Translations under genes and position numbers: made by a program
Part shown: piece after piece, positions 34,597-40,936 of the stretch
Position numbering within the stretch: position 1 is the first letter of the stretch
Layout of the letters: each line of letters starts with the position of its first letter
IMG/VR virus record: IMGVR_UViG_3300043399_000272
Coordinates: 62,001-126,000 of that record
Strand: one strand, 5' to 3'
DNA length: 64,000 nucleotides
The notes under the pieces: generated by a model
What the model was told of the DNA's origin: nothing
Seen by the model: the letters and a program-made list of their open reading frames with translations, nothing else
Databases searched by the model: none

Positions 34597-37380
34597 TTAA
34601 TTTGTACGCAGTGCAACAAGCATTTCTTCTTGCAGCAACCTAGACTTATACAACTCATTTAGCATCAATCGGCTGTTATCGTCGGTCATAGAGATTAAGT
34701 CAGCTAGTAATTTACCAGCATTTGGTTGCGAACTTAACGGGTTTATAGATGAAATGGGCTGTTTAGAAACTTCATTTCTATAGTTAGTTAAGCTGTTTGC
34801 TGCATCTGATAACAATGCTTGATATGACGCAGCACTTGTAGCTACTTCGTTTTTATGAAGCATTACAGGGTATCCTGAATTAGGACCACTGAATACTCCA
34901 CCGTATCTTGCTTCTTCAAAATGCACAGGGTCTCTAGGTACTGTTTGCTTCAAGCCCTGTGCGTTAAACGCCGTTACTAATTTTGGATCAGTATAGTTTT
35001 GGACATCGATTGCTTTGCCCATTTCATGCTTACTGGAACCAGGAGGAGCTACAGGCATTCCTGTTTTGCCTCTAGCTAAGTAGTCAGCATAAAGTTGTCT
35101 TTGTTTTTCACTATCCCTAAAAGAACTGTTAACTTGTACTTTCTTACCAGTTAATGCGAAATAATCAGTAGCAGCAGAAACAACTTTCTCCTTAAAAGCA
35201 GGATTTAAGTTATCAAAATTAGTTCTTGATCCTGAAGCTCCACCAAAGGATAAAATCTTATCTACTTGTCCAGGTGCTGCGGGCGCAGCTGGGGCTTCAA
35301 CTGAAGGGACTGAAGGTCTTTTACCTCCTACTGCTTTACTGAATTCATCTACTGCCTTTTTAAATGTGTCAGTTGCCCCTTTGTGAATATTAGTCGAAAT
35401 GTTAAATGCTTTAACAACACCATCCATTAACATTGCGGCACCTTGCTGCTTTCGACCAGCATCGATCATATTTTCAGTGTCTTTGTCTCCGCGTTGTGCC
35501 ATTTCAGCTAGTCTACGAGCGACTGCTTGTTGTAGGTCTAAACCTTCAACTAAATTTGAATTTAATTTTTGTTGGGTGTCTAACAATCCTGCAAACTTAC
35601 CTGGTATAATACCCTGAACAGCTTCTGAACCACCAAATCTAACAGTAGGTGCTACTCTTAATAACGCCTCCCTCAAATCAACTGCTATGCTTCCTAATAA
35701 TTGATTAGCTTTTTGACCACTTTCTAATCCTTGTATAAGTCTAGGCATTGACTGCAATACTGCTGCGGCTTCTGCTGATGCTGGACCTCCAGCACCGTAT
35801 TGTGCAATACCTTTAGCTAATTGAGACTGACCCATAGCTTGCATACTAACCGCAGCTTCATAGTATTGTCTTAATCTTTCTAATTCAGCTTGCGGTGCTC
35901 CTCTAGCTTCTGCTTCTAAAATAGATGCTCTTAGCTCGTCTACAGCCATTATAGCTTCACGTGCTTCTTCTTGTTCTTTTCTAGTAGCACCAGTTAATTC
36001 TTGAAGTAGAACCAACTCTTTGATATATGCTTCTGACCCTTTAATTAACTGACTTTCAGTTTTGAGCCTTGACATCCCAAGTCTAGTTTCTTGGGCCATG
36101 TATTTTAAGGTAAGTTCTCGTTGCTCGTTTGCAACAATACCCAATGCTTCTAATTCTTTTCCGGCGCCGCTTTTGAATAGTTCTCCAGCAACTCGAATAT
36201 ACTGTCTAGCTCCTTCGCTAGTTGTAGCCCCAAAATACTTTAAATCTTTTGCACTTTGGGCTAGAATTCTATTGAATTCTTCAATCTCAGCTACAGTCAT
36301 CCCCAATGTCTGCATCTGTTCAAAAACATCAGACATGCCACCGGATAACAAAATACCCGAACGGGATAGATCGTTGAATGACTTAAATAATTTGTCTGAC
36401 TGTATAGCAGCTACTTCGTTTGCTTCACCTGCTTTCTTTATAGCAGTACCACCGATTGCAAGTGCGGCCCCAAATCCCCTTAGTACCCAACGTAATGCGC
36501 CCATTCCAGGTATTAACATCATTGCAATACCTATTGCTTGGGTTGCTGTTCCCAATTCATCAGTAAACTCTTTGACTGCTCTAGCAGAAACAGCGGCACC
36601 CCTAGCACCGTTGTATACTTCTTTAGTCATCTTAGCAGTTGCATTGTATAATCCTGTACCAACAGCAGTTAGTAGAATCCAACCTGCGCTAAGTGTTGCG
36701 CTCTTTCCAATTAAATCAAAGACTTTATTGTTTAAATCTGCTAGGAATGAACCACCTGTTTTATATTTGTCAGTAAGTTCTTTGAGTACGTTCCCGCTTT
36801 CTTCTTTCATTCGGTCACGTAAATCTTCTTTTTTATCTTCAACTGCTTTGCGCTTGTTTTCTTTCTCGATAAGTTTTAAATTTTCTTTTTGCTCTTTTGA
36901 TAAGATATTAACAATGTTTCCATAAGTGTCAATTTTCTTACCTAAGGATTGAAGTCTTATTTCATATTCACTCTGCTTAAAAGTACCACCAGCTTCGCCG
37001 GTTCCGGCTACTTTTACTTTTGTTAACTTGCTTAATGTTTTACCTAACTCGTTGAATTGAGTTATCAATCCCTGAGTTGCTTTTGACAGACTCTTAAAGT
37101 CTTTACCTAATGACTTGCTAGAATCAGATACGGCTCCAAACCCTCGGGTTGCATTATCGCTAGTTTTCTTAGCAGCAGAAGTAGTGGTATTGAGTTCAGT
37201 TGTTTTCTTTAACAACTTATCCAATTCTTTGTTCAACTTAGCTACAGTTGACTTTGTAGTATCAGTAGTAGTATTGAATTTACCAAACCCAGAATCCAAT
37301 CCAGTGGTAGAGTCTGTTAATTCTCGGATACTCTCCGACAATCTTCTAATTTCTTCTGGGTCTATATTATTGTCAGCCAT
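34597..37380 (-). CDS. tape-measure-like protein with a C-terminal M15 (D,D-peptidase-like) domain
   Basis: Long amphipathic helical body with a hydrophobic segment; VNSSFRD..KQRQLY, APPGSSKHEMGKAIDV, DPVHF zinc-peptidase motifs. Confidence 0.75.
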   Translation of the reverse strand: MADNNIDPEEIRRLSESIRELTDSTTGLDSGFGKFNTTTDTTKSTVAKLNKELDKLLKKTTELNTTTSAAKKTSDNATRGFGAVSDSSKSLGKDFKSLSKATQGLITQFNELGKTLSKLTKVKVAGTGEAGGTFKQSEYEIRLQSLGKKIDTYGNIVNILSKEQKENLKLIEKENKRKAVEDKKEDLRDRMKEESGNVLKELTDKYKTGGSFLADLNNKVFDLIGKSATLSAGWILLTAVGTGLYNATAKMTKEVYNGARGAAVSARAVKEFTDELGTATQAIGIAMMLIPGMGALRWVLRGFGAALAIGGTAIKKAGEANEVAAIQSDKLFKSFNDLSRSGILLSGGMSDVFEQMQTLGMTVAEIEEFNRILAQSAKDLKYFGATTSEGARQYIRVAGELFKSGAGKELEALGIVANEQRELTLKYMAQETRLGMSRLKTESQLIKGSEAYIKELVLLQELTGATRKEQEEAREAIMAVDELRASILEAEARGAPQAELERLRQYYEAAVSMQAMGQSQLAKGIAQYGAGGPASAEAAAVLQSMPRLIQGLESGQKANQLLGSIAVDLREALLRVAPTVRFGGSEAVQGIIPGKFAGLLDTQQKLNSNLVEGLDLQQAVARRLAEMAQRGDKDTENMIDAGRKQQGAAMLMDGVVKAFNISTNIHKGATDTFKKAVDEFSKAVGGKRPSVPSVEAPAAPAAPGQVDKILSFGGASGSRTNFDNLNPAFKEKVVSAATDYFALTGKKVQVNSSFRDSEKQRQLYADYLARGKTGMPVAPPGSSKHEMGKAIDVQNYTDPKLVTAFNAQGLKQTVPRDPVHFEEARYGGVFSGPNSGYPVMLHKNEVATSAASYQALLSDAANSLTNYRNEVSKQPISSINPLSSQPNAGKLLADLISMTDDNSRLMLNELYKSRLLQEEMLVALRTN

Positions 37381-37390
37381 TTTTTAGTGA

Positions 37391-37414
37391 TTAAATAATT
37401 CTAATGTATTTATG
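37391..37414. promoter_or_regulatory. pair of opposed late promoter-like motifs
   Basis: TTAAATA at 37391-37397 (+) and CATAAATA at 37407-37414 (-), between divergent genes. Confidence 0.55.
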
Positions 37415-38464
37415 ACCGAAAAAACTGTGTCTACACCAGCCTTCAGAAAACCTGCATTATACTTTAAACTTCCCAGCAACGGTAAATTTTACCCAGAAAA
37501 TAGTTTAAAGTTGCCACCTAACAACGAGTTACCGGTGTATCCCACTACGGGTTTAGATGAAATCACTATAAAAACAGTAGACGCATTGTTTAACGGTTCG
37601 GCAATAGTTGAAGTTATCAGAAGCTGTGTACCCGATATTCCTGATCCTTGGGAAATACCCGTAGTAGATTTAGACCCACTATTGGTTGCAATCAAGTTAG
37701 CATCATTCGGAAACGGCATGGACATTGATTCAACTTGTCCTGAATGCAACGAATCTAGTAAGTACGGGTTAAATTTAACTAACATATTGAATAACTTAAA
37801 ATTAGGTGATTACGACTCTGAATTAGAAGTTGACGGTATCTACGTTAAGTTTCGTCCATTAAAGTACAAAGATTACAACAGATTCAATATCCAAGAGTTT
37901 GAGTTTCAAAAGATTATCAATTCAATTGATATGATAAAAGATGAAAAACTAAAAGAAAAGAAGAATATAGATGCCATCATGGCTTCGCTTGAGATGCACA
38001 TAGAACGCATAACTGCAAGTATAGAATACATTAAAACTTCGGATAACTTAGTTAACAACGCAGACTTTATAAGAGAGTTCCTAGAAAACTGTAATGTTGA
38101 TTATTACCGAAAAATCAGAGAGCGTTATACAACTCTTAAAGAGTCTACACAAACCAAACCACTGGTTATAAAATGCACTCACTGTTCACATGAGTATGAG
38201 CAACTACTAATGCTAAACTATTGCGAATATTTTCGGGTTAGACTATTGTATATGCAACCGGAAGAAATTCAAGAATGGTTAACTAGTATGGAAAAGGATG
38301 CATTAGAAATTAAGAATAGTGCATTGAAAATGTCCTGGTATATGCGTGGAGGTATATCATTCAATGAAATACTGCATTTGTCAGACAGAGAACGAGAAAC
38401 GATTAACGAAATCATTAAAGAAAACTTAGAGACAACTAAAAAGACGCAGTTACCATTCTTCTAA
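37412..38464 (+). CDS. gp26: baseplate hub assembly protein (gp26-like), long form with a C-terminal ~75-aa extension
   Basis: RKPAL..KLPS, DEI..KT...L.NG, SC.PDI.DPW, two CxxC pairs; extension ...SWYMRGG...KENLETTKKTQLPFF. Confidence 0.75.
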   Translation: MTEKTVSTPAFRKPALYFKLPSNGKFYPENSLKLPPNNELPVYPTTGLDEITIKTVDALFNGSAIVEVIRSCVPDIPDPWEIPVVDLDPLLVAIKLASFGNGMDIDSTCPECNESSKYGLNLTNILNNLKLGDYDSELEVDGIYVKFRPLKYKDYNRFNIQEFEFQKIINSIDMIKDEKLKEKKNIDAIMASLEMHIERITASIEYIKTSDNLVNNADFIREFLENCNVDYYRKIRERYTTLKESTQTKPLVIKCTHCSHEYEQLLMLNYCEYFRVRLLYMQPEEIQEWLTSMEKDALEIKNSALKMSWYMRGGISFNEILHLSDRERETINEIIKENLETTKKTQLPFF

Positions 38465-38488
38465 AAAGTACAACTCGTTTTTTTGGTC

Positions 38489-38496
38489 TATAAATA
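38489..38496 (+). promoter_or_regulatory. perfect T4 late promoter TATAAATA
   Basis: Exact consensus, followed by a GGAG SD (38507-38510) and ATG 38516. Confidence 0.8.
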
Positions 38497-38515
38497 CACG
38501 AATATTGGAGATATC

Positions 38516-39334
38516 ATGTCAAACAACCCATTGAAAAATTATTTTCGCAAGCCTGCATTAACAATAAAACTACCTAGCGGTGGTCAAGGTTACAAAGAAG
38601 GTGCATTACAATTGCCTGAATCAGGTGAGTTGTCTATATACCCAATGACGGCAATGGATGAGATCAATGTAAAGACTCCTGAAAATCTAACGAACGGAAA
38701 TGCAGTTGTTGGTTTAGTTCGTAGTTGTATCCCTGATATCAAAGACCCTTGGGAAATTTTAAGTACTGATTTAGATACCCTATTATTGGGTATTAGAATT
38801 GCTACTACTGGTAAGATGCTAAAAGTCGAAACCGAATGCCCAAACTGTAGCGCAGAAAACAAACATGATATTAACGTATATGATATGCTTGCAGCTATTG
38901 GTAATAGCGGCTACGACCAATTGTTATCTTTGAATGGATTGTCAATCAAGTTCAAACCACTGAACTATAGACAAATCATGAAGGCAAATGAATCCCAAAC
39001 ACAGATTCAACGAAAGATTGATTCAATTGATGAACAAACATCAGAAGAAGCAAAACTTAAAATTTCAGCAGAAGTTATTAAAGAACTGAACAACATGTCA
39101 TTTGTATTAGTCGGGGAAGCAGTTGAATATATAAAGACCCCTGACAATGTAGTGTTTGAAAAGGAATTTATTCGTGAATTCCTAGAAAATTGCGACAAAG
39201 ATACATTCGATAAAATCAAGCAAACAAATTTGGATTTACGTGCTGCCACCGATATTAAACCAGTGAATCTCACTTGCACATCATGTAATCATGAATATGA
39301 GTTCTCTTTGGATATCAATGTGAACTCAATCTAA
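38516..39334 (+). CDS. gp26: baseplate hub assembly protein (gp26-like), short paralogue
   Basis: 48 of the first 87 aligned residues are identical to 37412..38464 (by-eye alignment); two CxxC pairs; no extension. Confidence 0.75.
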   Translation: MSNNPLKNYFRKPALTIKLPSGGQGYKEGALQLPESGELSIYPMTAMDEINVKTPENLTNGNAVVGLVRSCIPDIKDPWEILSTDLDTLLLGIRIATTGKMLKVETECPNCSAENKHDINVYDMLAAIGNSGYDQLLSLNGLSIKFKPLNYRQIMKANESQTQIQRKIDSIDEQTSEEAKLKISAEVIKELNNMSFVLVGEAVEYIKTPDNVVFEKEFIREFLENCDKDTFDKIKQTNLDLRAATDIKPVNLTCTSCNHEYEFSLDINVNSI

Positions 39335-39387
39335 GTCCATAGTTACTCATTTATCCTAAACTACACTATCTTACTTTTATCTTTAGT

Positions 39388-39437
39388 AGATGACCTTCGG
39401 TCATCTTACCTTCACAATGTTCACTTCGTTCACATTG
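39388..39437. terminator. two hairpins at the convergence of + and - transcription units
   Basis: AGATGACC-TTC-GGTCATCT (39388-39406); CAATGT...ACATTG (39415-39437). Confidence 0.5.
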
Positions 39438-39499
39438 CTTGGTATACTGATTTATTCTAATTAATTCTTTTTGATTCTAATACTAATCTTTATTAGGGG

Positions 39500-39870
39500 G
39501 ATATATACTGCCGCTTTGAAGCCATGGTAGTGCTATTTTAGCACTACCAATGGATAAACTATGCCATGCCCGTCATCCTTTGCCGTCTGTTCCCCAGCTA
39601 GACGCCCTGTACTGACTCTAGCTGCGATCGGTTGCCCTGTAAATTGTTATGGGACTGTAGTGAGCCTATTGTACTTAGAAACATTCATACAACGACTCGG
39701 CAACGCATGTTACATATCCGCAAGACAGAATTAGATATGTACTCATTGAGGGTTCCCTAATAGATTGCCCTCTCGATCTCCCAAGCAGTATCACTACTAC
39801 TTGCATACTCCAGATCCATCAGCTATCTTTCAAGCATCTTCAAGGAGGTCCTACAAACTAGGACGACTAA
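39500..39870 (-). ncRNA. candidate large structured non-coding RNA (family not recognised; ends approximate)
   Basis: No ORF of 60 aa or more; about 46% GC (137/300 over 39541-39840) in an AT-rich context; at least five stems; GUGA tetraloop and G-U pairs read correctly on the - strand. Confidence 0.55.
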
Positions 39871-39886
39871 TTTTTATGTTAATAAA

Positions 39887-40438
39887 TTAAGTTTGTGATT
39901 TTAAATTTGACGTGGTGTCTGTTGTTGAACCTGAATATAATTTTACTAAGTCTTTGTTATGTTTGAAAAAGCTGTCAAACTCTGTGATCAACCAATCACC
40001 GTATGTTTTACTAGAATAAAAAGTATAACTGTCTATTCTCCAAGTTAGTTTTGGTTGAACTGCAACGAATTGTCCGATACGATTAAACTTCATAAAAAGA
40101 ATGTTTAAATCACCTTCGTCCTCAACGTCTAAAAGTTGATCCAGCCACGAATCAAGTTGTTTGCAGCTTCCGGTAAGCAGTAAGTGAAACGGGAAGTCTT
40201 TATAGAATTTGCATTCTGCATTCATTTTACTGAAGGAGTGCCCCGGAACAATGTCGCCCTTAAAAGAACGAATTTGTCCCTCATGAAGCACTTCTTTACG
40301 GACTTGATTCTTGCCACCTACATATGCGCCGGATCCAGGTGCACGAATGAATGATTCATTGTACAACTCTGATAAAAATTTAGCGACTGTGCGCTCGTAT
40401 CCTGATCCTTTTGCTTTTTGCGGTGATGGCATATTCAT
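39887..40438 (-). CDS. PD-(D/E)xK nuclease, Holliday-junction-resolvase-like
   Basis: KAKGSGYER.VA..L, RAPGSGA, GDIVP, ECKFY; start may be 40432. Confidence 0.75.
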   Translation of the reverse strand: MNMPSPQKAKGSGYERTVAKFLSELYNESFIRAPGSGAYVGGKNQVRKEVLHEGQIRSFKGDIVPGHSFSKMNAECKFYKDFPFHLLLTGSCKQLDSWLDQLLDVEDEGDLNILFMKFNRIGQFVAVQPKLTWRIDSYTFYSSKTYGDWLITEFDSFFKHNKDLVKLYSGSTTDTTSNLKSQT

Positions 40439-40459: not shown

Positions 40460-40936
40460 TTACAAATTTTTTAGTCTAAAAATGGTATTTTCATACAAAT
40501 CGTGCAATATTCCAATACCGCCGACTCTATTCCACTCATCAATATTCTGTATTCTATCATCAATGAGTATGTCTCCTTGTTTACAATGAAACTGTTTATC
40601 TTTACTAAAAGGACCGAAATGTACAGGAACATCAGGGAAATACGTTTGTCCCCACATGACCTTGTCATAAAATGCCCAATGAAGTTTGTTTGATTTTGGA
40701 ACTGCTGTTAAAAAGTAAAGTTCCATGTTTCTATCTTTAGCAAATGTTCTGCAAAAATTTACCAAATCATCCGCATACGGTGTTTTCTTTAAATCTCTGT
40801 ATAGTCTAGGGTTTCGTGCAATTTGATTCCATAAATTATCGGGATACTCAACTTCCGAACCAAACCCATGCACACGAAATGCATATTCATTGAAGTCTGC
40901 TACGACTCCATCCATATCTAGGTATATCGTATTCAT
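40460..40936 (-). CDS. HAD-family 5'(3')-deoxyribonucleotidase-like protein
   Basis: IYLDMDGVVADF, FLTA.P, K..W, ILIDDR..NIDEW...GG.GILH. Confidence 0.85.
   Translation of the reverse strand: MNTIYLDMDGVVADFNEYAFRVHGFGSEVEYPDNLWNQIARNPRLYRDLKKTPYADDLVNFCRTFAKDRNMELYFLTAVPKSNKLHWAFYDKVMWGQTYFPDVPVHFGPFSKDKQFHCKQGDILIDDRIQNIDEWNRVGGIGILHDLYENTIFRLKNL

What the first reader, a model, noticed from the sequence alone, without database searches (positions are those of the whole stretch)
37412..39334. Long and short gp26-like paralogues may hard-wire a G/GT-style chaperone pair by duplication instead of frameshifting
Seen: two tandem paralogues next to the tape-measure-like gene. The first continues in frame through GAA TAT TTT CGG GTT AGA (38225-38242) into a ~75-aa extension ending LPFF; the second stops right after its last CxxC. 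The short copy has a perfect TATAAATA and a GGAG SD; the long copy has a degenerate promoter and no SD. Established: lambda-type tail chaperones make abundant G and scarce GT by -1 frameshifting next to the tape-measure gene. Inference (my unverified recollection is that relatives carry the extension in another frame after a T-rich ...FFG* end): this phage fixed both products as separate genes and sets their ratio by expression signals.
Basis: partly seen in the sequence, partly recalled or inferred. Interest (0 to 1): 0.65.

Follow-up and report, generated by a model that had tools for sequence, protein, structure and literature searches.

The report
Frameshift replaced by duplicated chaperone genes
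In this uncultured giant phage, the short and long forms of the T4-type tail assembly chaperone (gp26/gp51 family), which its relatives make from one gene by slipping back one base at TTTTTTC, are encoded by two tandem genes; phage T4 is already reported to do the same, and here it arose independently.

Summary
Window 37412-38464 (350 aa) and 38516-39334 (272 aa) are tandem PF12322 (T4 gp26/gp51) paralogues, 42% identical. Only the first carries a 76-aa helical extension.

More than 90 distinct related genes hold a single copy: metagenomic jumbo phages, 121Q, RaK2, PA5oct, Atu_ph07, cyanophages, a pelagiphage and KVP40. Nearly all carry an invariant T_TTT_TTC; two isolates have a T8 or T9 run. 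The homologous extension sits in the -1 frame, often with no start codon of its own.

The window's long gene is an exact in-frame mimic of that trans-frame product, and its slippery run is destroyed. The short gene ends where the zero frame would end.

Four lineages, diverged to synonymous saturation, keep the pair:
- short: ATG, GGAG and ATAAATA;
- long: no Shine-Dalgarno, GTG start in three of four, ATTAAATA.

The principle is not new. Vladimirov et al. (2022), as cited by two papers I could read, identified gp26/gp51 as the T4 tail assembly chaperones, with separate short and fused long genes. My profile comparison confirms that the gp51 tail is homologous to the extension. The window pair nests inside a frameshifting clade, so it is a second, independent origin.

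Separately, a well-supported unknown structured RNA of about 500 nt lies just downstream.

The parts
37412..38464 (+). Long gp26/gp51-family gene (350 aa). It is the in-frame equivalent of the trans-frame (N-domain plus extension) chaperone isoform.
   Evidence: PF12322 match at E 3e-15. Collinear with the zero-frame plus -1-frame products of relatives. AF2 model has pLDDT 92 and pTM 0.85. BFVD fold matches to 'baseplate hub (assembly)' proteins reach E 1e-21.
38228..38236 (+). Former slip site, now TAT TTT CGG (Y F R). The frames are fused and the T-run is broken.
   Evidence: Relatives have NNT TTT TTC G at this point, in 33/33 and 60/60 unique genes. The other three long genes read TAC TTT AGA or TAT TTT CGG, which shows free synonymous drift.
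38234..38461 (+). C-terminal extension (residues 275-350), helical. It is homologous to the -1-frame ORF of relatives and to the C-terminal tail of T4 gp51.
   Evidence: tblastn finds the extension in the -1 frame in every relative. hhalign of the extension profile against the gp51 tail scores 26.4 (P 4e-5); none of 300 column shuffles exceeds 18.6. Helices span 270-345 in the model.
37390..37397 (+). ATTAAATA, a degenerate late-promoter-like motif upstream of the long gene. No Shine-Dalgarno follows it.
   Evidence: Conserved in all four lineages with the pair and in relative L018. SD duplex energy is +0.9 to -1.7 kcal/mol, and the start codon is GTG in three of four lineages.
38489..38496 (+). 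TATAAATA, a T4-late-type promoter motif upstream of the short gene.
   Evidence: It is the only copy in 64 kb, where 9.4 are expected. The core ATAAATA sits 5-28 nt upstream of about ten ORF starts in the window, including the portal and the 927-aa gene. Relatives carry TATAAATA upstream of their single gene.
38507..38510 (+). GGAG Shine-Dalgarno of the short gene, 5 nt before ATG 38516.
   Evidence: Read directly from the sequence. Duplex energy is -6.4 to -6.6 kcal/mol in all four lineages; single-gene relatives have a median of -5.6 and all start with ATG.
38516..39334 (+). Short gp26/gp51-family gene (272 aa), the equivalent of the zero-frame (N-domain only) isoform. The FF slip motif is lost (…INVNSI*) and no remnant of the extension remains.
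   Evidence: PF12322 match at E 1e-18. It aligns end to end with residues 2-273 of the long-form profile. No extension hit lies downstream.
34597..37380 (-). Divergent 927-aa tape-measure-like virion protein with a VanY peptidase domain, the presumed client of the chaperones.
   Evidence: VanY match at E 9.5e-9, plus coiled-coil-type weak hits. The RaK2 homologue is annotated as similar to a tail tape measure protein. The PA5oct homologue was detected in virions by MS. There is no detectable similarity to T4 gp29.
37407..37413 (-). ATAAATA late-promoter-like motif for the divergent 927-aa gene. It overlaps the start codon of the long gene on the other strand.
   Evidence: Its reverse complement, TGTATTTA, is the motif conserved upstream of the chaperone gene in relatives.

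Best explanation
The two genes are the short and long isoforms of the T4-type tail assembly chaperone (gp26/gp51 family, PF12322). They are encoded separately instead of being made from one gene by -1 recoding.

In the ancestral state, kept by nearly all relatives, ribosomes translating a single gene mostly stop one to five codons after a T_TTT_TTC heptamer, giving the short form. Occasionally they slip back one base there and read about 75 further codons, giving the long form.

In the lineage of this window a second copy arose. In one copy a one-base change fused the frames and the T-run was then broken, so it makes only the long form. The other copy lost the slip motif and the extension, so it makes only the short form.

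The short gene keeps the ancestral strong signals: ATAAATA-type late promoter, GGAG and ATG. The long gene has a variant promoter motif, no Shine-Dalgarno and mostly a GTG start. The low long:short ratio once set by slip frequency would therefore now be set by initiation.

By analogy with lambda G/GT and the published assignment for T4, the shared N-domain would hold the tape-measure-like protein encoded next door, and the extension would link it to the growing tube or hub.

Shown here: the paralogy, the recoding signature in relatives, the exact correspondence of the two genes to the two products, their maintenance under purifying selection, and the conserved difference in signals.

Inferred: the ratio, the chaperone activity and the binding partners.
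For: - Paralogy and family.
- In 40 of 40 related loci there is a single gene, an invariant TTTTTTCG, the extension in the -1 frame, and homology that starts at FFR right at the heptamer. In many of them the -1 ORF opens only 13 nt before the zero-frame stop and has no start codon.
- In 33 and then 60 unique genes the heptamer is TTTTTTC every time. In the 33-gene set, where background usage was measured, the preceding codon ends in T in 33/33 against a background of 0.55-0.65.
- The same signature occurs in PA5oct, RaK2 and RsoM2USA and in P-SSM2, S-PM2, HTVC008M and KVP40. In the four latter phages the -1 ORF is, where I read the annotation (S-PM2, KVP40, HTVC008M), the annotated mini 'gp51'.
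- T4 gp26 and gp51 are both PF12322. The gp51 tail is homologous to the extension.
- Four lineages carry the long+short pair in the same synteny. dN is 0.09-0.34 with dS saturated in the N-domain, the extension and the short gene.
- LONG and SHORT are each monophyletic at 100/100 and nest inside a 99/98-supported clade of frameshifting genes, far from the T4 pair.
- The signals differ consistently between the two genes.
- Gene order is tube - gp26 - mini-gp51 - tape measure in KVP40 and HTVC008M.
- In PA5oct the gp26-like protein is not flagged as found in virions, while its neighbour is.
- Published T4 precedent: PMC10885494 and PMC12846349, both citing Vladimirov et al. 2022.
Against: - There are no expression or protein data for this uncultured phage.
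- LONG and SHORT are not sisters in the ML tree. SHORT groups with frameshifting genes L018/L019 at 95/90, and the AU test of LONG+SHORT monophyly gives p = 0.0745. Tandem duplication is therefore not demonstrated, and acquisition of a second copy remains possible.
- The two N-domains are only 42% identical, so they may have diverged in function beyond a simple G/GT relation.
- The tape-measure identity of the neighbour rests on annotation of homologues and general features. It has no detectable similarity to T4 gp29.
- The fold has no solved relative, so no similarity to solved lambda-type chaperones could be shown.
- No conserved downstream stimulatory RNA structure was found at the slip site of relatives.
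Confidence: 0.8

Rival explanations
1. The second copy was not made by tandem duplication. It was acquired by recombination from a related frameshifting phage (xenologous gene), and the two copies were specialised afterwards.
For: In the ML tree SHORT nests with frameshifting genes L018/L019 (95/90) inside a 97/85 clade, while LONG branches outside it. Each copy is as similar to single-gene relatives (45-50%) as the copies are to each other (42%).
Against: The AU test does not reject LONG+SHORT as one clade (p = 0.0745). Both stems are long (0.64 and 0.68), so the placement may be a rate artefact. The arrangement is strictly tandem, with a 51-59 nt spacer in all four lineages. Either route leads to the same present-day system.
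Confidence: 0.3
2. The two genes are sub- or neo-functionalised paralogues with distinct jobs in hub assembly, as T4 gp26 and gp51 are separately essential. They are not simply an abundant and a scarce isoform of one chaperone.
For: The N-domains are only 42% identical. T4 gp26 and gp51 are 20% identical and are listed as separate hub assembly chaperones. Both clades have long stem branches after the split.
Against: In more than 90 relatives one N-domain serves both products, so the ancestral function needs only one N-domain sequence. The conserved weak initiation signals on the long gene fit a ratio constraint. The two readings are not exclusive.
Confidence: 0.2
3. In the relatives the long form is made by transcriptional slippage (an extra U added at the T-run) rather than by ribosomal frameshifting. 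The window pair would then replace RNA-polymerase slippage.
For: The signal is a pure T-run. It reaches T8 in HTVC008M and T9 in RsoM2USA. No conserved downstream stimulatory structure was found.
Against: Most genes have only T6 followed by C, which is short for polymerase slippage (general knowledge). The run is always phased as X_XXY_YYZ, with tRNA-Phe able to re-pair in both sites, like the T_TTT_TTG site of P2 E/E' (general knowledge). The phase is, however, also fixed by the conserved FF/FFR residues, so sequence alone cannot decide.
Confidence: 0.2
4. Relatives do not recode. The small downstream ORF is a separate gene translated by termination-reinitiation, and the window's long gene is a plain gene fusion.
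For: In 121Q and Atu_ph07 an ATG overlaps the stop codon (TAATG, ATGA). GenBank records annotate the ORF as a separate gene.
Against: In most loci there is no ATG, GTG or TTG before the conserved FFR..LL..EEI segment, and the -1 ORF opens at the heptamer directly after a stop. Homology to the window's in-frame protein and to T4 gp51 begins at the slip site, upstream of the annotated ATGs. Synonymous positions of the heptamer are invariant.
Confidence: 0.04
5. Assembly or sequencing artefact: a homopolymer miscall fused the frames, and a chimeric assembly duplicated the gene.
For: None beyond the fact that the source is a metagenome assembly.
Against: An independent contig is 100% identical over 9 kb. 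Three other lineages at about 70% nucleotide identity, from ENA, Logan and NCBI assemblies, have the same pair. The junction differs by substitutions, not by run length. The copies are 42% identical, not repeats.
Confidence: 0.01

Closest known systems
Phage T4 gp26 and gp51, reported as the T4 tail assembly chaperones encoded as one short gene and one longer fused gene instead of by frameshifting (Vladimirov, Gautam & Davidson, Virology 2022; known to me only through PMC10885494 and PMC12846349)
   Same: Both belong to the same protein family: all four proteins match PF12322. The short member ends just after the FF motif (T4 gp26 ...EFFELL*). The long member carries a homologous C-terminal tail in frame. 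Neither has a slippery run left. Both pairs lie beside hub and tape-measure genes.
   Different: The window pair is tandem and co-directional, while T4 genes 26 and 51 are divergent. The window copies are 42% identical against 20% in T4. The window pair nests inside a clade that still frameshifts, separate from the T4 pair, so it is a younger, independent origin. Its extension is 76 aa against about 48 aa in gp51.
gp26 plus mini-'gp51' of KVP40, cyanophages S-PM2 and P-SSM2, pelagiphage HTVC008M, and the single gp26-like genes of jumbo phages 121Q, RaK2, PA5oct and Atu_ph07
   Same: Same family and same extension. They show the ancestral one-gene state with T_TTT_TTC (or a T8/T9 run) and the extension in the -1 frame.
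   Different: They need recoding to make the long form; the window phage does not. In the records I read, the extension is either annotated as a separate small gene starting at an internal ATG or not annotated at all.
Lambda G/GT and P2 E/E+E' tail assembly chaperones (Xu, Hendrix & Duda 2004; Christie et al. 2002; from general knowledge)
   Same: Two products share an N-terminus, with the long one scarce. They are made by a -1 slip just upstream of the tape measure gene. P2 uses a T-run (T_TTT_TTG). In KVP40 and HTVC008M the gene order is tube - chaperone - tape measure.
   Different: No sequence or fold similarity could be shown. The N-domain here is about 270 aa with two CxxC pairs, much larger than lambda G, and has no solved relative. 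In the window the two products are separate genes, and the tape-measure-like gene is divergent.

Membership tests
T4 gp26/gp51 family (Pfam PF12322 T4_baseplate; phrog_150) | Sequence match to the family profile above the curated cut-off | tested here: met
   Long copy 56.8 bits and short copy 68.0 bits against a cut-off of 24.5. phrog_150 E 2e-16 and 3e-23. T4 gp26 and gp51 score 216 and 178 bits on the same model.
T4 gp26/gp51 family (Pfam PF12322 T4_baseplate; phrog_150) | Shared fold with other family members | tested here: met
   The AF2 model (pLDDT 92) has 74 BFVD matches at E<=1e-3. These include proteins named baseplate hub, hub assembly protein, hub assembly chaperone and Aeromonas phage 25 gp26. 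No solved structure exists to compare with.
T4 gp26/gp51 family (Pfam PF12322 T4_baseplate; phrog_150) | Two CxxC pairs flanking the helical middle | tested here: met
   Long copy has CPEC and CTHC; short copy has CPNC and CTSC. T4 gp26 has CPEC near the end.
T4 gp26/gp51 family (Pfam PF12322 T4_baseplate; phrog_150) | Long member carries the gp51-type C-terminal tail | tested here: met
   The profile of the extension aligns with gp51 residues 222-248 at score 26.4, P 4e-5, with 0/300 shuffles reaching it. The full-length profile aligns to the last residue of gp51. The newer Pfam model PF28602, which marks the gp51 homologues, is not assigned to the long forms.
Tail assembly chaperone pair of the G/GT type | Two products sharing the N-terminal domain, one with a C-terminal extension | tested here: met
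   The two genes correspond residue for residue to the zero-frame and trans-frame products of relatives.
Tail assembly chaperone pair of the G/GT type | Long product made by programmed -1 frameshift at a slippery heptamer | tested here: not met
   The window has no slippery run in either gene (TAT TTT CGG...AAC TCA ATC TAA) and the extension is in frame. The feature is present, by sequence signature only, in all relatives examined. This is the point of the finding: the pair would work like G/GT without the recoding.
Tail assembly chaperone pair of the G/GT type | Encoded next to the tape measure gene, typically between the tube and tape measure genes | tested here: inconclusive
   The pair is adjacent to a 927-aa tape-measure-like gene, but divergent from it. 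Canonical co-directional tube - gp26 - mini-gp51 - tape measure order is seen in KVP40 and HTVC008M. The tape-measure identity is inferred. No gp19-type tube gene was found in the 74%-complete record.
Tail assembly chaperone pair of the G/GT type | Long form much scarcer than short form | not testable with these tools
   Only the signals could be read. Short: ATG, GGAG (-6.4 to -6.6 kcal/mol) and ATAAATA. Long: no SD (+0.9 to -1.7), GTG in 3 of 4 lineages, and ATTAAATA.
Tail assembly chaperone pair of the G/GT type | Binds the tape measure protein and is absent from the finished virion | not testable with these tools
   There is only indirect support. The PA5oct record flags the neighbour, but not the gp26-like protein, as found by virion MS. 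T4 gp26/gp51 are listed as hub assembly chaperones, and gp51 is absent from the particle (PMC3004832).

The most novel reading that the evidence does not exclude
The pair is a second, evolutionarily independent replacement of programmed -1 recoding by gene duplication in the gp26/gp51 chaperone family, convergent with T4. The scarce isoform is now throttled by a conserved weak start (GTG or no Shine-Dalgarno, variant late promoter). It would be a natural experiment showing that what selection preserves is the two-isoform stoichiometry, not the frameshift itself. It would also provide a young pair (42% identity) in which the first steps after hard-wiring can still be read.
Probability: 0.6. Interest if true: 0.55.

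Novelty: new member of a known kind. Interest (0 to 1): 0.45.

Why it matters
Programmed -1 frameshifting in tail assembly chaperone genes is one of the most conserved recoding events in phages. Why it is kept, rather than replaced by two genes, is a standing question.

T4 was the one described exception. This window adds an independent and much younger case, nested among close relatives that still frameshift, so the two solutions can be compared within one lineage:
- the slippery run decays as soon as it is not needed;
- the short copy sheds the extension;
- the long copy acquires weak initiation signals.

The comparison also has a practical use. It shows that the T_TTT_TTC recoding signature runs through the whole family: Rak2/121Q/PA5oct-type jumbo phages, Atu_ph07, cyanophages, a pelagiphage and KVP40. 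In the GenBank records I read, the extension is annotated as a separate 'hypothetical protein' or mini 'gp51', or is not annotated at all. Those annotations could be corrected.

Tried and rejected
- Downstream frameshift-stimulating RNA structure: RNAalifold on 28 slip-site regions gave no consensus pairs.
- Solved-structure relatives: phmmer against PDB sequences gave only weak helical chance hits to primase large subunit. Foldseek against PDB found nothing at E<=0.001. VIA-align wide gave a best Z of 8.2 on a generic helical hairpin. No comparison with solved lambda-type chaperones was therefore possible.
- Complex prediction of the short protein with residues 200-700 of the 927-aa neighbour returned 'no answer'. 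This is neither evidence for nor against binding.
I did not try another route.
- Similarity of the 927-aa protein to T4 gp29: none by BLASTP. NCBIfam gave only coiled-coil noise.
- T4 gp19 tube family in the phage record: no match.
- Rfam and tRNA scans of 37000-40200: nothing.
- Megablast of the locus against GenBank phages: no near relative.
- Literature: no held paper combines gp26/gp51 with frameshifting in jumbo phages. The key paper, Vladimirov et al. 2022, is not held. I know its content only from two citing papers, and cannot say whether it covered Rak2-type jumbo phages.
- A first global hhalign run against single T4 gp51 misaligned. It was replaced by local profile-profile runs.
Full report
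**What is there.**
Window 37412-38464 (+) encodes a 350-aa protein. Window 38516-39334 (+) encodes a 272-aa protein; its true start is ATG 38516, not the TTG 38483 of the ORF list. Both match Pfam PF12322 (T4_baseplate) above the curated cut-off, and both match phrog_150 'baseplate hub'. They are 42% identical over 259 residues without a gap.

The long protein continues in frame through GAA TAT TTT CGG into 76 more residues ending LPFF. The short one stops at ...DINVNSI*. The whole phage record is an IMG/VR contig of 260 kb, about 74% complete, and holds only these two family members.

The neighbours are:
- upstream and divergent, a 927-aa coiled-coil, hydrophobic protein with a VanY peptidase domain, and then a T4 gp20-type portal;
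- downstream, gp46/gp47-type recombination nuclease genes.

**Relatives make the two products from one gene.**
tblastn against GenBank phages found 94 records, all below 60% identity, almost all jumbo myophages of the Rak2/121Q/PBECO4/PA5oct/Atu_ph07 kind. In nearly all of them the match splits into two pieces.

In 121Q the annotated 'baseplate hub' gene ends CAT TTT TTC GAG TAA. The next small 'hypothetical protein' lies in the -1 frame. Atu_ph07 is the same, with CAT TTT TTC GCA TGA.

A scan of IMG/VR gave 42 loci. Every locus other than a twin of the window itself has the following:
- one gp26-like gene;
- the extension homologue in the -1 frame;
- the invariant string TTTTTTCG, phased as T_TTT_TTC G;
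- a -1 reading FFR-x-[RK]-LL..., homologous to the window's in-frame YFRVRLLYMQPEEIQ.

In many loci a TGA sits immediately before TTT TTT in the -1 frame. The overlap is then only 13 nt, and there is no ATG, GTG or TTG before the conserved part. That argues against independent initiation.

Among 33 unique genes the heptamer is TTTTTTC in all 33. The wobble base of the preceding codon is T in all 33, against a background T usage of 0.55-0.65. Sixty further unique genes, found through an unrelated neighbouring motif, all have TTTTTTCG.

The same signature is seen in other isolates:
- PA5oct (agT TTT TTC AGA), RaK2 and RsoM2USA (a T9 run);
- much further away, the cyanophages P-SSM2 and S-PM2, pelagiphage HTVC008M (a T8 run) and Vibrio phage KVP40. 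Each of these has a single PF12322 gene.

In S-PM2, KVP40 and HTVC008M the -1 ORF is the annotated mini 'gp51 baseplate hub assembly catalyst'. In KVP40 and HTVC008M the gene order is tail tube - gp26 - mini-gp51 - large tape-measure-type protein, which is the canonical chaperone position.

No conserved downstream RNA structure was found. Sequence alone cannot separate ribosomal slippage from polymerase slippage on the T-run. I favour the ribosome because most runs are only T6.

**The window pair is the hard-wired version.**
The long gene equals the trans-frame product with the frames fused. Its former slip site is TAT TTT CGG. The short gene equals the zero-frame product with the FF motif gone, and no remnant of the extension follows it.

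A protein search found five more in-frame long forms at 64-75% identity. All other hits are 272-288 aa. Contigs carrying three of these long forms show the same tandem long (345 aa) + short (272 aa) pair, next to the VanY/tape-measure-like gene and, where the contig reaches that far, the portal gene.

At the junction these lineages read TAC TTT AGA or TAT TTT CGG. The positions that are invariant in frameshifting relatives drift freely once the frames are fused.

Between the four lineages dS is saturated while dN is 0.09-0.34, in the long N-domain, the extension and the short gene alike. All parts are therefore under purifying selection. An independently assembled contig is 100% identical to the window over 9 kb.

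**Origin.**
In trees of the N-domain, the four long genes and the four short genes each form a 100/100 clade. Both lie inside a strongly supported (99/98) clade of frameshifting genes, itself inside the jumbo-phage clade. T4 gp26 and the gp51 family sit together elsewhere. So this is an origin separate from T4's.

LONG and SHORT are not sisters in the best tree: SHORT groups with L018/L019. The AU test of their monophyly gives p = 0.0745. Tandem duplication with rate acceleration and acquisition of a second copy both remain possible.

**Expression signals.**
The core ATAAATA lies 5-28 nt upstream of about ten ORF starts in the window. These include the portal and the 927-aa gene, whose motif lies on the minus strand across the long gene's start codon. 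The full TATAAATA occurs once in 64 kb, against 9.4 expected, in front of the short gene. Single-gene relatives carry TATAAATA plus a Shine-Dalgarno and an ATG start.

| Signal (all four hard-wired lineages) | Short gene | Long gene |
|---|---|---|
| Late-promoter-like motif | [T/A]ATAAATA | ATTAAATA |
| Shine-Dalgarno | GGAG (-6.4 to -6.6 kcal/mol) | none (+0.9 to -1.7 kcal/mol) |
| Start codon | ATG | GTG in three of four |

This fits a scarce long form, but nothing was measured.

**Relation to T4 and to the literature.**
T4 gp26 (208 aa) ends ...KEFFELL* on GAG TTC TTT GAG, which is not slippery. T4 gp51 (249 aa) is also a PF12322 member. The two are adjacent, divergent genes and are 20% identical.

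A profile of the long forms aligns with a 90-member gp51 family profile right to gp51's last residue. The extension alone aligns with the gp51 tail at score 26.4, while the best of 300 column shuffles reaches 18.6. T4 therefore has the same short/long solution.

This is published. PMC10885494 summarises Vladimirov, Gautam & Davidson (Virology 2022) as showing that some T4-like phages carry one short chaperone gene and one longer fused gene instead of frameshifting. PMC12846349 cites the same paper for poly-T slip signals in T4-like chaperone genes. I could not read the paper itself.

The review PMC3004832 lists gp26 and gp51 as hub assembly chaperones, and says gp51 is absent from the particle.

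**Structure.**
AlphaFold2 with an 80-row alignment gives pLDDT 92 and pTM 0.85. The extension forms helices over residues 270-345. The model matches 74 predicted viral structures at E<=1e-3, mostly named baseplate hub or hub assembly proteins, among them Aeromonas phage 25 gp26. It matches no solved structure.

**Verdict.**
The kind of solution is already known from T4. What is new here:
- an independent, younger, tandem instance inside a frameshifting clade;
- the breadth of the T_TTT_TTC signature across jumbo phages, whose records I found unannotated for it;
- the conserved contrast in initiation signals.

**Seen in passing.**
Directly after the chaperone gene(s) lies a conserved, structured, + strand RNA of about 450-550 nt (window 39336-39881). 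It has no Rfam family. It is present at the same place in relatives and in at least 120 IMG/VR contigs.

A covariance model of its 3' 169 nt found 72 distinct sequences. On that alignment 98.8% of cells are paired, against 36-47% when partners are slid. 24 of 31 pairs show double-sided changes, and there are 420 compensatory cells against 17-61 in the slid controls. Its function is unknown.

Noticed in passing
window 39336-39881 (+); also L049 5917-6453, L051 4350-4870, L018 5026-5588 and about 80 further loci (L068-L147): A conserved structured RNA candidate of about 450-550 nt lies directly downstream of the chaperone gene(s). Its nucleotide conservation is far above that of the flanking genes. 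It has a 5' hairpin, a core of about 380 nt closed by a helix, and a 3' hairpin followed by a T-run (terminator-like, 39848-39864). There is no Rfam, tRNA or tmRNA hit. An exact 22-nt motif from it occurs in at least 120 IMG/VR contigs, always after a gp26-like gene where the contig allows this to be seen. A covariance model of the 3' 169 nt found 72 distinct sequences: 98.8% of cells paired (36-47% when partners are slid), 24/31 pairs with double-sided changes, and 0/500 shuffles reaching the observed score. It was not found in 121Q, RaK2, PA5oct, Atu_ph07 or the L020-L040 group. Function unknown.
   Followed up: yes
window-wide; for example 34575 (-), 37413 (-), 38490 (+), 45057 (+), 52150 (+), 1108 (+), 15709 (-): ATAAATA (often GATAAATA) occurs 17 times on both strands. 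About ten of these lie 5-28 nt upstream of ORF starts, so it looks like this phage's late-promoter core. GATAAATA is 26-fold enriched within 90 nt upstream of ORFs. The full T4 consensus TATAAATA is depleted (1 found, 9.4 expected).
   Followed up: partly
window 34597-37380 (-): The tape-measure-like 927-aa protein carries a VanY D-Ala-D-Ala carboxypeptidase domain (residues 744-808). [quoted passage not shown] The tape measure may therefore double as the cell-wall-cutting enzyme.
   Followed up: partly
L053 4283-4513 (RaK2); L052 4304-4540 (PA5oct); L001 4771-4995 (121Q); L065 3691-3864 (S-PM2 gp51); L066 3613-3780 (KVP40.0327): Public annotations miss the recoding. The -1 extension ORF is unannotated in RaK2 and PA5oct, is a 'hypothetical protein' in 121Q and Atu_ph07, and is a mini 'gp51 baseplate hub assembly catalyst' starting at an internal ATG in S-PM2, KVP40 and HTVC008M. 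Homology nevertheless runs upstream to the T-run.
   Followed up: partly
L054 4282-4290 (RsoM2USA); L062 (HTVC008M gp26 end): Two relatives have longer T-runs at the slip site: T9 in RsoM2USA and T8 followed directly by TAA in HTVC008M. In these, transcriptional slippage is a more serious alternative to ribosomal frameshifting.
   Followed up: no
P0002-P0093 (gp51 homologues): The precomputed Pfam column assigns a newer family, PF28602, to the tail of gp51 homologues. It is absent from the local Pfam copy and is not assigned to the window's long forms, although profile comparison shows the two tails are homologous.
   Followed up: no
window 39887-40438 (-) and 40460-40936 (-): Between the RNA element and gp46 lie a 183-aa protein, whose homologues in sister contigs carry PF24608 (PDDEXK_15), and a 158-aa protein without family hits. 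Sister contigs have sugar-nucleotide genes (epimerase, cupin, PfkB) at this place instead, so it is a variable island.
   Followed up: no
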